The translations under genes were made by a program, and so were the position numbers. 64,000 nt of DNA from positions 682,001 through 746,000 of the forward strand of contig NW_027271529.1 of assembly GCF_040938485.1 (NCBI RefSeq). The letters run 5' to 3'. This document shows positions 56,416 to 63,690 of the stretch, one piece after another. The notes beneath the pieces were generated by a model that saw only the letters and a list, made by a program, of their open reading frames with translations, was not told the origin of the DNA and ran no database searches. Source of the stretch: Diadema antillarum (taxonomy: Eukaryota). How positions within the stretch are numbered: the stretch's first letter is position 1; the number at the start of each line of letters is the position of its first letter.

Positions 56416-58539
56416 AAGGCCACGCAGCAATAAATGGCAGATTTTGTTTTTCTTTTTCGCTGATGCCAAGGTGTCTAATACAGGTGTGCAAATGAGCACC
56501 AAAAGTTAATACAATTCGATGTATTTTGCCAATACATTACAAATTGCATGAAAATCAACATGAATTTACATAAAGATGTCTGTGTGCTTGATAACTTGCT
56601 CTGAGATATGTAGTTCTAATTCTACATTTGCTCAATTATTCAAAAAAAAAAAAACAACTCTTACTGTCTTATCAGTCGATGTGCCGTAATGATAAGTAGG
56701 CCTTTATAGAAGATGTAGTGAAGAGACGAACTTTCTTCTTCTCCTCCTTCCGCTTGTTTTACTTACAAACGAATTCTTCATTCAAACATAAACAGTAAAG
56801 GATGGCACAAATTGTATATCAATATTCCCCCAGACTGTCTCAAATAAGAAATAAAACTTCTGTGTTGTCATAATTTCAATAGCATCAGCTCGAAAGAATA
56901 ATGTTGGATCAGAATGTGAACATGTGAAACTCAAAAAATGTGAATCTAAAATGGATAAGACATTAAATTCTAAGCAATATTTGTATATTTAGTTCGAAAA
57001 CTAAACTTAGGTTNNNNNNNNNNNNNNNNNNNNNNNNNNNNNNNNNNNNNNNNNNNNNNNNNNNNNNNNNNNNNNNNNNNNNNNNNNNNNNNNNNNNNNN
57101 NNNNNNNNNNNNNNNNNNNNNNNNNNNNNNNNNNNNNNNNNNTGCTCGGAGTCCTAAGAAAGTATAGATTCACAACAGTAGGTTTACGTCTCTAACGGAG
57201 TTTTTANNNNNNNNNNNNNNNNNNNNNNNNNNNNNNNNNNNNNNNNNNNNNNNNNNNNNNNNNNNNNNNNNNNNNNNNNNNNNNNNNNNNNNNNNNNNNN
57301 NNNNNNNNNNNNNNNNNNNNNNNNNNNNNNNNNNNNNNNNNNNNNNNNNNNNNNNNNNNNNNNNNNNNNNNACAATGGCACTGCCTAATCCCCAAAGTCG
57401 TGGACGTTTGTCCTACTACATACTGTATCAAACTTGAACGGCATACTTTTCCATATGTCAGCTTGTGGAATGTACGATTCAAATAAAGAATCAGTAATGC
57501 TGGCCTCAAAGAAATGTGTGTGTTTGGTGTTGTGATTTCTGTCACTTTCAGATATACCGATCCCAGAACTAGTGAAAGCAGGGGTATCGCTGTGGTTATA
57601 GCTCCAATGATCACGAATGATCGTTTTTTTTTACTCCAATGGCCTATACTATTGGTTTTGTTTGAATGCACCTAATATTTTATTTTTTATTTTTTTTTTG
57701 TTACTGATAGCAATATAATGTTATATTCGTGTTCCAGTGACTATAGAGTAAACTTATACGCGAACAGAATTGAATCCTTAAGTCGGACATATAACAAGAA
57801 TGTTACGGAATATGACAGTTTCATATGCTTCCTATGATATACTTAAAAATAGGTGAGATAGATTGCACAAGGTAGAGGTTGTCATGTGGCTTCATCATCT
57901 TATCTTATTCTCTTCCCTTGCATACAATATTCATCACATTTTTCTTTTCATCCAAAAGAAATTAGATGGAGTATTGAGTTGTAACATTCTTGACTTTTAG
58001 CGGAGCAACGGATTGTTCAGGGGAAATTAGATATGATGAGAAGGTCGGCACCTTTTTGCTCATTATGGCAAATACAGACTCCCGTTATAACGGATCAAAG
58101 TCTTCGGGACAGGCAGCTTTCTTTCGATCTTTTTATCAAAATTTCCTTATAACTGAACAAATAAACAACAACAACATAGGGGGATAATATTGGTGCTTGA
58201 ATTTTTACTTCCTTGTAACCGGAATTTCGTTCTAATCGTGTTCGTTATGACGGAAGTTCATTGGATCTTTTTATATTGTAAGCACAAAACGCACAGCACA
58301 TATTTAAATGTATGCGTGGGATTACATTTATGTCATTAAAGAGCATTATGACAGTAACAGTACATAAATTTACAATGTGAATTTCTTTTATTCACTTTCC
58401 GTTTATCTATGATGTCATGGAGCTTTATACAATCACATGTTGTCATGGAAATCTAAATACACGGCGGATCAGAGCTGTGGAGAATTGAAATGACGTCAGT
58501 GCAAAGTCACTTATCTACATAAGATATGAACATTCTTCA

Positions 58540-61655: not shown

Positions 61656-61977
61656 TTACTGATCATGCTTGGAGCGCGATGCAGCGCAGACGTTTTGGTA
61701 AATAACCTGCGCATCTTCATTAGGGGGGAAATTGGGTATTTCGTAGAGGCTCCAAGTACTGTCCATATCTCGACTCGATATCATTTTCAGATCAGGAGGA
61801 CCATTGGATATTTCGTAGAGGCCACCAGCACTGTCCACATCTCGACTCGATGTCACTTTCAGATCAGGAGAAAAATTGGATATTTCGTAGAGGCCACCAG
61901 CAGTGTCCACATCTCGACTCGATATCACTTTCAGATTAATCGCACCGTTGTCCGATTCCCTGACTTTCCTCTTATAA
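61656..61977 (-). CDS. Possible terminal exon for a tyrosine-motif cytoplasmic tail with three 24-aa repeats
   Basis: Open frame YKRKVRES...(DLKVxSSRDVDSAGGLYEISN)x3...EDAQVIYQNV...*. The acceptor at 61979-61978 lacks a polypyrimidine tract and no upstream exon was identified. Confidence 0.35.
61731..61938. repeat. 72-bp tandem repeat, about 3 copies
   Basis: ATTGG starts at 61731, 61803 and 61875; no indels. Confidence 0.95.
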
Positions 61978-62317
61978 CTACGGCGACATTTTCGTTTCGT
62001 TTTGTTGTGTTTCCAGAACGAACGATGGCCACGTGAAGTATGTATGTCCCGCCAGATTGTAGCGAGGAAGGAAAAATAACACAAAGAACGAAGGAATAGA
62101 ATACAAGACGATAAGACCATCCTAATCATTATTACTTAAGGGTGCATGTTCACTTAATATACAAACACATATATTGTTATTGAGACCAACAGACTCTCCC
62201 ATGTTAAGACCGTAAGCTCTATCTTTATTTGGACTGAATAAGTCTCTTAATACATACATAATAACTGAAAGAAATTATGGACTTGAGGCGGGCGTAGCTC
62301 TCTTGTTCTCCCTTTTA

Positions 62318-62355
62318 ATCGAGCTTTCGGCCTGTCATCGGGCCTTCATCTGGAT
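62318..62355 (-). ncRNA. Second hammerhead motif, with one core substitution (CAGAUGA)
   Basis: Minus strand reads AUC-CAGAUGA-A-GGCC-cgaugaca-GGCC-GAAA-GC-UC-GAU followed by AUUAAA. Helix I differs from the other copy by a compensatory pair. Confidence 0.62.
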
Positions 62356-62565
62356 AATTTCTTTCACTATGTGCTACCCATAATTAGGCACTGCGTATTA
62401 TGTTTGGGAAGGAACAATCTCTCGCACTATATATATATATATATAATATGAGAGATAGTTCCCTGGGTCCCGAACGTGCGCGGTGCCGCATTGTTGGTTG
62501 CATATAATTGAAAGAAATTGGACTGAGGCGGGACGTTGCTCTCGATCTTAGTCTCCCTTTTATTT

Positions 62566-62603
62566 GTCAAGCTTTCGGCCAGTCATTGGGCCTTCGTCAG
62601 GAC
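62566..62603 (-). ncRNA. Minimal type I hammerhead ribozyme motif with intact core (Penelope/retrozyme-type)
   Basis: Minus strand reads GUC-CUGACGA-A-GGCC-caaugacu-GGCC-GAAA-GC-UU-GAC: helix I GUC/GAC, helix II GGCC/GGCC, palindromic AGCU in place of helix III, then AAUAAA. Confidence 0.75.
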
Positions 62604-63690
62604 CTACCAACAGAACGATTATTATATGAATAACCTGATGTGTCATATAATATATAATGCAATTTCACATATTACTAATCTTCTAAACCATTTCCTTTAT
62701 ATACACAAATCAATCATTCAATTCAATACAAATATCCAATCTNNNNNNNNNNNNNNNNNNNNNNNNNNNNNNNNNNNNNNNNNNNNNNNNNNNNNNNNNN
62801 NNNNNNNNNNNNNNNNNNNNNNNNNNNNNNNNNNNNNNNNNNNNNNNNNNNNNNNNNNNNNNNNNNNNNNNNNNNNNNNNNNNNNNNNNNNNNNNNNNNN
62901 NNNNNNNNNNNNNNNNNNNNNNNNNNNNNNNNNNNNNNNNNNTTAACTTACCATGCACAAGTCATAGCCACAAGATTTCCAATGACAGAAATGGCCAAAC
63001 TGATGCCATAGCAGAGGTGCAACCACATAATATCTCCTGTAAGCCAGAGTAAGACGAGCGCACAATATAAACACTTTAGCATTTAACTGTAAACATTATC
63101 ATAGTATACAAACATTCAATGTTTGTGAGTAAGATGGTTCCGAACATTACATTCGGTGCAAGTTAACCGTTCTATTCAACTCCGCTTCGCGTCAATAGAA
63201 CAGTTAAACTTGCACCGGATGTAAAATTCGAAACGTCGCACGAATGATAAAACATTGAATATTTCTTTTATGCAGCACACAATAATGGTATGTAGGGCAG
63301 GTCTAGACCAAAATAGAGTTAATGGCCATTCTTTAAGAATTACGAAAGCAATTTTCATTAATAATCAGCCAGCAGTAAGACTTCTTGCTCCTCAGTTGAT
63401 TATGACTTTTTTTTTCATCGGATAGGAAATTTCTGGCATGAAATATCAAGCAACCTGCGTGATTTTATTCGGCTGGTTCGTTAACACTGACACAGCTGCA
63501 TCGTTCCCCCTTCACAAAGTGATACTGCCACAGATTCGCACACCTGTACTTTCACTTCCTTGCACAATAACATTTTCTCATGCCTATATATACCATTTAC
63601 ATGCACCATCATGAGCACAGTGCCAACGTTTAGTGTGAATGATACCAGTTCTCACAATCGCATTTCATCATTCACACAATTCCAAGACAG

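What the first reader, a model, noticed from the sequence alone, without database searches (positions are those of the whole stretch)
62261..62603. Pair of minimal hammerhead ribozymes that may complement each other as a dimer
Seen: two diverged copies of a roughly 100-bp unit (62261-62355, 62504-62603), each with a minus-strand hammerhead fold. Helix I co-varies (GUC/GAC versus AUC/GAU), helix II is GGCC/GGCC, and helix III is reduced to the palindrome AGCU. A poly(A)-type signal (AAUAAA or AUUAAA) follows each predicted cut (62569/62568 and 62321/62320). Known: Penelope-like elements and retrozymes carry such minimal type I hammerheads, which need two copies to form helix III. Inference: the upstream copy has an intact core but a CUU site; the downstream copy has a mutated core (U4A) but a better CUC site. 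In a double hammerhead the intact core could pair (GUC with GAU, one wobble) and cut the partner's site. The spacers are not homologous, so these look like short mobile ribozyme cassettes rather than a plain tandem repeat. They also lie on the same strand as, and just upstream of, the putative receptor-tail exon.
Basis: partly seen in the sequence, partly recalled or inferred. Interest (0 to 1): 0.8.

Follow-up and report, generated by a model that had tools for sequence, protein, structure and literature searches.

The report
Two Penelope retroelement hammerhead relics
The two small hammerhead-ribozyme motifs are real, but they are leftover tail ends of two different Penelope-like jumping genes that landed separately in one TA repeat; this is an ordinary feature of this genome, not a purpose-built ribozyme pair.

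Summary
Observation confirmed. Two roughly 100-nt units about 80% alike lie on the minus strand (62603-62504 and 62355-62261).

Interpretation partly supported.
- Copy A is the 3' end of a young, high-copy Penelope-like element (PLE), about 1000 first-look candidates at 96-98% identity. Full-length copies encode a 1007-aa reverse transcriptase plus GIY-YIG endonuclease, have pseudo-LTRs and carry the hammerhead 65 nt upstream of the ORF start.
- Copy B belongs to an older related family (82-89% identity). It is the inverted half of a head-to-head pair of truncated copies.
- Its core change at position 4 is private. Other family members checked have the normal core.
- A sister copy of the locus keeps copy B but lacks copy A. 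A third-family element occupies its TA tract instead.
- Among the 150 best genomic hammerhead hits, all 21 close pairs lie on opposite strands.

So the 248-nt same-strand spacing comes from independent insertions into one (TA)n tract. A cross-acting double hammerhead can be drawn but is not favoured, and cleavage and transcription remain untested. No retrozyme features were found. Earlier follow-ups in this scan reached the same reading on other DNA of this genome. The kind is known and interest is low.

The parts
62428..62742 (-). 3' end fragment of a young Penelope-like element, family 1. It holds copy A. Its 5' border is hidden by the N gap at 62743-62942.
   Evidence: 96.5% identical over 315 nt to L017:8696-9010, the 3' end of a full-length element with an RT + GIY-YIG ORF. 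About 994 first-look candidates in the genome at 96-98% identity.
62566..62603 (-). Hammerhead A: minimal type I motif with an intact core (CUGACGA ... GAAA), palindromic AGCU in place of helix III, and U17. The cut is predicted between 62569 and 62568. A private change at 62581 removes the fifth helix II pair that the family has.
   Evidence: Sequence; family alignment; parsed helices; 76.4 bits against model R1, which was built with this copy included.
62442..62503 (-). Tail of the family-1 copy: the first 62 nt of the element's ORF (ATG at 62503-62501). It ends in UAUA, where it meets the TA tract.
   Evidence: In L017 the ORF starts at 4451, right after the hammerhead unit. The pseudo-LTR repeat runs to 4512 (= 8996), and the downstream copy then continues into (TA)n.
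62428..62441 (.). (TA)n tract: the shared target where the family-1 copy and the family-2 direct fragment meet tail to tail.
   Evidence: Sequence. All 16 family-1 copies fetched end in (TA)n. Both outer ends of the composite insertion in L017 lie in (TA)n.
62356..62427 (+). 5'-truncated direct copy of family 2: the last 11 nt of the hammerhead unit plus a decayed ORF-start tail. Together with the family-1 tail it forms the long hairpin in the spacer.
   Evidence: 80-86% identical to the segment that follows the hammerhead unit in family-2 copies, against 72% to the family-1 tail. Inverted repeat I1. Hairpin in the centroid fold.
62261..62355 (-). Copy B: inverted, 5'-truncated family-2 copy without a tail. 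It is truncated just 5' of helix I, and its 3' end abuts TA-rich sequence.
   Evidence: 82-89% identical to at least 452 first-look candidates. Head-to-head layout as in family-1 loci. 91% identical counterpart in sister locus L019.
62318..62355 (-). Hammerhead B: core CAGAUGA, with A at core position 4 (62351) where the other family-2 copies aligned have U. Site GCUC, cut predicted between 62321 and 62320.
   Evidence: The same change occurs only in sister locus L019.
62743..62942 (.). Run of 200 N. It hides the 5' border of the family-1 insertion. It was not filled.
   Evidence: Unique flank resumes at 62943 and matches L019:1-787.

Best explanation
The two hammerhead motifs are relics of two independent retrotransposition events by two related families of Penelope-like elements (PLEs, endonuclease-bearing). 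Both events hit the same (TA)n microsatellite.

Order of events (inferred):
1. An older family-2 element inserted as the typical PLE head-to-head pair. Copy B (62261-62355, minus strand) is the inverted truncated copy. 62356-62427 (plus strand) is the very short direct copy with its tail.
2. A young family-1 element later inserted in the adjoining TA tract in the opposite orientation. This left its 3' end with hammerhead A on the same strand as B, 248 nt upstream.

In the parent elements the hammerhead sits in the pseudo-LTR, 65 nt upstream of the ORF start codon. It has no helix III of its own. The 4-nt palindrome (AGCU or AAUU) can form helix III only with a second copy. So it most likely cleaves as a dimer and trims tandem or read-through element transcripts just upstream of the ORF (inferred, following Cervera and de la Pena 2014).

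At this locus both copies are most likely inert. Copy A has lost one helix II pair. Copy B has a core substitution and a 5' truncation right at helix I.

Shown: the motifs, family membership, the full-length element, the layout and the sister locus. Inferred: the order of events, the ribozyme's role and its inactivity here.
For: Motifs:
- They are real and far above chance.

Copy A:
- It matches a repeat with about 994 first-look candidates at 96-98% identity that always ends in (TA)n.
- Full-length members L017 and L018 carry an intact 1007-aa ORF. RVT_1 scores 36 bits (cut-off 29.6). A C-terminal GIY-YIG scores 23.2 bits (cut-off 22.6).
- L017 has 1578-bp direct repeats 100% identical and 4484 bp apart, plus an upstream inverted 5'-truncated copy.
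- Window 62428-62742 is 96.5% identical to the 3' end of that element.

Layout:
- Inverted partner copies lack the 62-nt tail, and direct copies have it.
- This matches the published PLE layout: an inverted 5'-truncated copy, a tail at one end, and microsatellite bias (PMC8557442).

Copy B:
- Its family has an intact core and a homologous ORF start.
- One family-2 locus has RT-like coding sequence, 67% amino-acid identity to family 1, next to its hammerhead.

Sister locus L019:
- Its flanks are about 95% identical to the window.
- It has copy B with the same core change but no copy A. Instead it has (TA)28 plus a third-family hammerhead element.

Genome-wide pattern:
- All 21 close pairs among the top 150 hits are head-to-head on opposite strands.
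- Same-strand pairs occur only 4.47-4.49 kb apart, in tandem full-length elements.

Conservation across families:
- The core is kept in every copy compared except copy B.
- Helices I and II covary.
- The helix III tetranucleotide stays palindromic.
Against: - The 5' border of the family-1 insertion is hidden by the N gap, so its full extent here is unknown.
- Family 2 is tied to a PLE ORF only indirectly, through ORF-start homology and one adjacent RT fragment. No full-length family-2 element was fetched.
- The sister locus is not a clean empty site. Another element occupies its TA tract, so loss of copy A there cannot be strictly excluded.
- No RNA data were found. Neither transcription nor cleavage, nor their absence, was shown.
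- Rfam hammerhead models do not score these motifs.
Confidence: 0.9

Rival explanations
1. Functional double hammerhead. On a minus-strand transcript the intact core of copy A pairs with the site of copy B. Helix III would be AGCU with AGCU, and helix I would be GUC with GAU. Cleavage would follow, possibly at both sites, releasing a 248-nt RNA.
For: The required pairs nest without a pseudoknot. The long spacer hairpin brings the two motifs together. Forcing copy A's core onto copy B's site costs only about 3.7 kcal/mol over the MFE. Dimer action is the published model for such minimal hammerheads (PMC4209133).
Against: - The juxtaposition comes from two separate insertions, and the sister locus lacks copy A.
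- No other same-strand close pair occurs among the top 150 hits.
- Helix I would be 3 bp with a wobble, helix III 4 bp, with no loop-loop contacts.
- The full double form costs 9.2 kcal/mol.
- PLE minimal hammerheads cleave poorly in vitro even as dimers or trimers (PMC4209133).
- No RNA evidence was found.
Confidence: 0.05
2. A metazoan non-LTR retrozyme: a short non-coding tandem repeat whose hammerheads excise a unit RNA of about 250 nt that is circularised.
For: The two same-strand hammerheads are 248 nt apart, which is within the size range of retrozyme monomers (PMC7229834). The intervening RNA is highly self-paired.
Against: - There is no homologous repeat unit. Only about 100 nt is shared, and the spacer and downstream flank are unrelated.
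- TRF finds no array there.
- The hammerheads are the minimal PLE type, not canonical type I motifs with a 6-bp helix I and loop contacts.
- Copy A belongs to an autonomous coding element.
- The A-spacer-B arrangement was seen nowhere else among scored hits.
Confidence: 0.02
3. Terminal inverted repeats of a foldback or MITE-type DNA transposon that happen to contain hammerhead-like sequence.
For: Many loci show the 100-nt unit as an inverted pair 20-2400 bp apart.
Against: - The inner junctions vary from locus to locus, as 5' truncation would produce.
- The pair is asymmetric: the tail is present on one side only.
- The unit is collinear with the 3' end and pseudo-LTR of an RT + GIY-YIG element.
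Confidence: 0.02

Closest known systems
Minimal hammerhead ribozymes (min-HHR) in the pseudo-LTRs of Penelope-like elements (Cervera and de la Pena 2014, PMC4209133)
   Same: - Type I topology and a conserved core.
[quoted passage not shown]
- No helix III hairpin, but a palindrome that allows a dimer.
- Location in the flanking repeats of an RT + GIY-YIG element.
- Most genomic copies are single motifs or opposite-strand pairs 100-700 bp apart, derived from truncated elements.
   Different: - Helix II is 4-5 bp here, against 7-8 bp in the Schistosoma families.
- Helix I is 3-4 bp.
- At this locus two motifs from different families lie on the same strand 248 nt apart, and one has a substituted core.
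- Sea urchin is not named in the main text of that paper, and no paper in the library combines PLE, hammerhead and sea urchin.
Canonical endonuclease-bearing Penelope-like elements (Penelope/Poseidon, Neptune, Nematis and Hydra clades; Craig et al. 2021, PMC8557442)
   Same: [quoted passage not shown]
- A partial tandem forming pseudo-LTRs.
- An adjacent inverted 5'-truncated copy.
- An extension (tail) at one end only.
- Insertion into microsatellites.
- A hammerhead in the pseudo-LTR.
   Different: - The clade was not assigned here.
- The tail is 62 nt, the first 62 nt of the ORF, rather than the quoted 30-40 bp.
- (TA)n preference is reported in that paper for Naiads, which lack canonical hammerheads.
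Metazoan non-LTR retrozymes (Cervera and de la Pena 2020, PMC7229834)
   Same: Type I hammerheads that work poorly alone. The spacing between sites is of similar size, and the intervening RNA is strongly self-paired.
   Different: There is no tandem array of homologous monomers, no canonical helix I or loop contacts, and no circular RNA shown. One unit belongs to a coding autonomous element.
HDV-like ribozymes at the 5' end of non-LTR retrotransposons (R2, L1Tc; cited in PMC13725137)
   Same: A self-cleaving motif placed just upstream of the element's ORF, here 65 nt before the AUG. It would define the 5' end of the element RNA.
   Different: A different ribozyme class, and this one depends on a dimer. 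Neither processing nor any effect on translation has been shown for PLE hammerheads.

Membership tests
Hammerhead ribozyme, minimal type I variant of PLEs | Conserved core: C3 U4 G5 A6 N7 G8 A9, G12 A13 A14, A15.1-U16.1, and H17 at the site | tested here: met
   Copy A meets all positions (CUGACGA, GAAA, U16.1, U17). Copy B fails at position 4, which is A at 62351; the other positions are met. The other family-2 copies aligned have U at position 4.
Hammerhead ribozyme, minimal type I variant of PLEs | Helix II of at least 4 bp with an unpaired nucleotide at its 5' end, and a short open helix I that pairs across the site | tested here: met
   Both window copies have GGCC/GGCC after an unpaired A, and a 3-bp helix I. 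On 34 distinct copies 89.5% of cells are paired. Compensatory changes occur at 2.3-1.3 (AU 18, GC 12) and at the inner helix II pair (UA 16, CG 11). Four to five families have different helices but the same core.
Hammerhead ribozyme, minimal type I variant of PLEs | No helix III hairpin; a self-complementary tetranucleotide that can form helix III only in a dimer | tested here: met
   AGCU in families 1 and 2, AAUU in families 3 and 4. It is always palindromic.
Hammerhead ribozyme, minimal type I variant of PLEs | Site-specific self-cleavage | not testable with these tools
   No RNA run was found. The four runs laid are contigs of unknown kind whose depth looks like DNA.
Rfam hammerhead families | Score against the curated covariance models | tested here: not met
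   No hammerhead family is listed at E<=10 on 4 kb or on 401 nt. The motif has no helix III hairpin of its own.
Penelope-like element (endonuclease-bearing) | ORF with a reverse transcriptase followed by a GIY-YIG endonuclease | tested here: met
   Met in full-length relatives of copy A (L017, L018): 1007 aa, with RVT_1 and GIY-YIG above Pfam cut-offs. The window fragment holds only the first 62 nt of the ORF.
Penelope-like element (endonuclease-bearing) | Pseudo-LTRs from a partial tandem, an adjacent inverted 5'-truncated copy, and a tail at one end | tested here: met
   L017: 2935-4512 equals 7419-8996 at 100%. The inverted copy 327-2922 lacks the tail. The same asymmetry is seen in 11 of the 16 family-1 loci fetched.
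Penelope-like element (endonuclease-bearing) | Family 2 (copy B) linked to a PLE ORF | tested here: inconclusive
   The ORF start after the hammerhead unit is homologous to family 1. One locus has an RT fragment at 67% amino-acid identity beside its hammerhead. No full-length family-2 element was fetched.
Metazoan non-LTR retrozyme | Tandem array (dimer to multimer) of homologous 150-450-bp monomers, each with a canonical type I hammerhead | tested here: not met
   Only about 100 nt is shared, and the spacer and following flank are unrelated. TRF finds no array at the site. The hammerheads are of the minimal type.
Metazoan non-LTR retrozyme | Expression as small circular RNA | not testable with these tools
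   No RNA run holds the stretch.

The most novel reading that the evidence does not exclude
The accidental same-strand pair works after all. On a host or read-through minus-strand transcript, the spacer hairpin brings the two motifs together. The intact family-1 core then cleaves at the family-2 site, and perhaps at its own. This would cut the host transcript or release a 248-nt self-paired RNA that could be circularised. It would be a natural case of two decayed ribozymes from different retroelement families complementing each other.
Probability: 0.04. Interest if true: 0.45.

Novelty: new member of a known kind. Interest (0 to 1): 0.12.

Why it matters
It matters little beyond annotation. 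The result explains one of many hammerhead-like hits in this genome as Penelope-like element debris. It also gives a rule for triaging the others:
- a 100-nt unit ending in (TA)n;
- an inverted partner copy without the tail;
- close pairs on opposite strands.

Two comparative points are modestly useful for PLE biology. First, across four to five families the helix III tetranucleotide changes but stays palindromic, which supports dimer-dependent cleavage. Second, in the full-length family-1 elements the hammerhead sits 65 nt upstream of the ORF start. Every inserted family-1 copy examined runs through the cleavage site: direct copies extend 62 nt into the ORF, and inverted partner copies stop at about the start codon. 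So the reverse-transcription template was uncleaved or longer than one unit.

Tried and rejected
- Rfam scans on 4 kb and on 401 nt at E<=10 gave only weak miRNA-like hits on the (TA)n hairpin and no hammerhead.
- The first genome search could not cut loci. They were fetched by coordinates instead.
- One genome search used the wrong strand coordinates of L012. It hit an unrelated 245-bp repeat in the flank and was repeated correctly.
- The covariance-model search of the whole genome was saturated by families 1 and 2: about 490,000 rough first-look candidates, of which 150 were scored. It could not enumerate further families. Other families were found only by chance in the fetched loci.
- The RNA evidence search found no RNA run. 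The four runs are contigs, so they cannot show ends or strand.
- MAFFT misplaced gaps in helix II of families 3 and 4, so pairs were parsed by script instead.
- Pfam and the ESM Atlas gave nothing for the neighbouring 157-aa ORF.
- Rejected readings: chance motif, retrozyme, and MITE.
- The organism was not verified here. Earlier notes of this scan call it a sea urchin.

Full report
**1. Observation**

- Copy A (62603-62504) reads: GUC, CUGACGA, an unpaired A, GGCC-loop-GGCC, GAAA, GCUU, then GAC.
- Copy B (62355-62261) reads: AUC, CAGAUGA, A, GGCC-loop-GGCC, GAAA, GCUC, then GAU.

The predicted cuts are 62569/62568 and 62321/62320. AAUAAA follows the first site and AUUAAA the second. The units align over about 100 nt at roughly 80% identity, while the spacer and the flanks do not align. 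A strict pattern for the motif finds only these two places in 64 kb, against 0.00 expected from shuffles. Rfam's hammerhead models do not score them at E<=10. The motif has no helix III hairpin of its own.

**2. What copy A is**

- The first 176 nt of the region (62603-62428) match about 994 first-look candidates in the 1.75-Gb genome, at 96-98% identity for the 40 scored.
- In 16 fetched copies the homology always ends 3' in a (TA)n tract and extends 5' for variable lengths.
- Walking 5' led to loci with same-strand copies about 4.48 kb apart.
- L017 (G000:C71:3236300-3246200) and L018 each hold an intact 1007-aa ORF. RVT_1 scores 36 bits (cut-off 29.6). A C-terminal GIY-YIG scores 23.2 bits (cut-off 22.6).
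- In L017 a 1578-bp direct repeat (2935-4512 and 7419-8996) is 100% identical. An inverted 5'-truncated copy (327-2922) abuts it.
- Window 62428-62742 is 96.5% identical to L017:8696-9010.

This is the published anatomy of an endonuclease-bearing Penelope-like element: pseudo-LTRs from a partial tandem, an adjacent inverted truncated copy, a tail at one end, microsatellite bias, and a hammerhead in the pseudo-LTR (PMC8557442; PMC4209133).

**3. Fine structure of the element end**

- In the full-length element the ORF's ATG lies 65 nt after the hammerhead cut site.
- Direct copies run through the hammerhead and 62 nt into the ORF. They then join (TA)n at a UAUA stretch.
- Inverted partner copies stop at about the ATG, again at UAUA.
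- Both outer ends of the composite insertion in L017 lie in (TA)n.
- In the window, the ATG is 62503-62501, the tail is 62503-62442 and the TA tract is 62441-62428.
- The 5' border of this copy lies inside the 200-N run at 62743-62942, which I did not try to fill.

**4. What copy B is**

- Copy B matches at least 452 first-look candidates at 82-89% identity. This is an older family.
- The prevailing sequence among those copies has an intact core (CUGAUGA), a GCUC site, a 4-bp helix I and a homologous ORF start after the unit.
- The segment 62356-62427, read on the plus strand, is 80-86% identical to the ORF-start tail of that family. It is only 72% identical to the family-1 tail.
- So 62261-62427 is a head-to-head pair of two truncated family-2 copies. 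Copy B is the inverted copy without a tail. The direct copy is 72 nt long and ends in the TA tract.
- One family-2 locus has an RT fragment (67% amino-acid identity to family 1) beside its hammerhead. I did not fetch a full-length family-2 element, so its PLE membership is supported but not complete.

**5. The pair is accidental**

- L019 (G000:C1151:22246-24418) is a second copy of this locus. Its flanks are about 95% identical to the window (63733-62943 and 62249-61651). The family-2 pair is 91% identical and carries the same A at core position 4.
- L019 has no family-1 copy. Beside the family-2 pair it has (TA)28 and a hammerhead element of a third family, on the other strand.
- So the family-2 insertion and its core change predate the split of the two loci. 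The TA tract was then hit independently in each.
- Among the 150 best genome-wide matches to a model of the motif, 21 close pairs were found. All are on opposite strands, head to head. Same-strand pairs occur only 4.47-4.49 kb apart, in tandem full-length elements.
- Among the hits scored, the A-spacer-B arrangement was seen nowhere else.

**6. Is the hammerhead real at family level?**

- On 34 distinct copies of families 1 and 2, 89.5% of cells pair.
- Position 2.3-1.3 is A-U in 18 copies and G-C in 12. The inner helix II pair is U-A in 16 and C-G in 11. Slid controls drop to 13-47% paired.
- Each of these is essentially one event between the two families, so on its own the evidence is thin.
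- Fetched loci also held motifs of two or three more families. Their helix II stems are entirely different (GAGGA/UCCUC, GGGGG/CCCCC, GACGA/UCGUC), as are their helix I stems (AUCC/GGAU, GACC/GGUC). They share the same core.
- Their helix III tetranucleotide is AAUU instead of AGCU, still self-complementary.
- This supports a conserved, dimer-dependent minimal hammerhead. I did not link families 3 and 4 to an ORF.

**7. The proposed cross-acting dimer**

- The pairs needed nest without a pseudoknot: copy A's helix I strand with copy B's site strand, AGCU with AGCU, and both helix II stems. The spacer's long hairpin sits inside them.
- The predicted minimum free energy (MFE) is -109.2 kcal/mol. 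Forcing copy A's core onto copy B's site gives -105.5. Forcing the full double form gives -100.0.
- So the fold is possible but not favoured. It rests on a 3-bp helix I with a G-U wobble and a 4-bp helix III, with no loop-loop contacts.
- Copy A has also lost the fifth helix II pair of its family, through a private change at 62581.
- PLE minimal hammerheads cleave poorly in vitro even as dimers or trimers (PMC4209133).
- That position 4 of the core is needed for catalysis rests on my own knowledge of hammerhead mutagenesis. It was not tested here.
- No RNA run holds the stretch. The four runs found are contigs whose depth profile looks like genomic DNA: about 20-65 on unique flank and thousands on the repeat.
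- Transcription and cleavage therefore remain untested.

**8. Rivals**

- A retrozyme is not supported. There is no array of homologous monomers, the hammerheads are minimal rather than canonical, and one unit comes from a coding element (PMC7229834).
- A foldback DNA transposon is not supported. The inner junctions vary, the pair is asymmetric, and the unit is collinear with the PLE end.
- Chance is excluded.

**9. Surroundings**

- Downstream on the same strand lies a 157-aa ORF (61656-62129). It has a hydrophobic start and three 24-aa repeats encoded by a 72-bp tandem repeat.
- It has no Pfam or Atlas match. Whether it is an exon, and whether the hammerheads lie in its transcript, is unknown.

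**10. Verdict**

The finding is a real motif pair, explained as debris from two insertions of a known kind of retroelement. Earlier follow-ups in this scan reached the same reading on other pieces of this genome. I reached it independently from the full-length element, the sister locus and the strand statistics. Novelty is low and the proposed cross-acting dimer is unlikely.

All sequences used are natural copies cited by reference.

Noticed in passing
L017:4344-4512 and 8828-9010 (G000:C71); window 62442-62568: In the full-length element the hammerhead cut site lies 65 nt upstream of the ORF start codon. Direct copies end 62 nt into the ORF at a UAUA stretch, and inverted partner copies end at a UAUA just at the start codon. 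This looks like priming by microhomology with the (TA)n target on a template that was uncleaved or longer than one unit.
   Followed up: partly
window 62559-62564 and 62314-62319; L003:2340-2360: A poly(A)-signal-like hexamer follows the cut site within a few nucleotides in families 1, 2 and 4: AAUAAA in families 1 and 4, AUUAAA in family 2. Inserted copies nevertheless extend about 125 nt beyond it. Its role is unknown.
   Followed up: no
L019:790-1000 (G000:C1151): In the sister copy of the locus, the TA tract next to the family-2 pair holds (TA)28 and a third-family minimal hammerhead (helix II GGGGG/CCCCC, palindrome AAUU) on the other strand. So the same microsatellite was hit independently in the two copies.
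   Followed up: partly
window 61656-62129 (minus strand); tandem repeat 61729-61936: A 157-aa ORF with a hydrophobic N-terminal stretch and three 24-aa repeats, each holding a GGLYEISN-like motif. The repeats are encoded by a 72-bp repeat present in 2.9 copies. No Pfam or Atlas match. It is conserved at 95% in the sister locus.
   Followed up: partly
L017:3870-4165 and 8354-8649; 614-909: The element's 3' untranslated region holds an internal tandem repeat of about 150 nt (two units about 90% alike). A weaker repeat of about 200 nt lies further upstream.
   Followed up: no
L012:1902-2320 (raw coordinates; G000:C1428): The flank of one family-1 copy is another repeat of about 245 bp, with about 488 first-look candidates at 76-87% identity. 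It was not identified.
   Followed up: no
L020:558-598 and L021:558-598 (G000:C2009, C890): Two identical loci carry a family-2 head-to-head pair whose direct fragment starts at the same point as in the window (AAUUUCUUUCA). The inverted copy is truncated deeper, inside the hammerhead. The shared start point may be a preferred switch site or common descent.
   Followed up: no
window 62743-62942, 57014-57371, 2109-2319: Runs of N (200, 129 + 165, and 211 bases). The first hides the 5' border of the family-1 insertion. None was filled.
   Followed up: no
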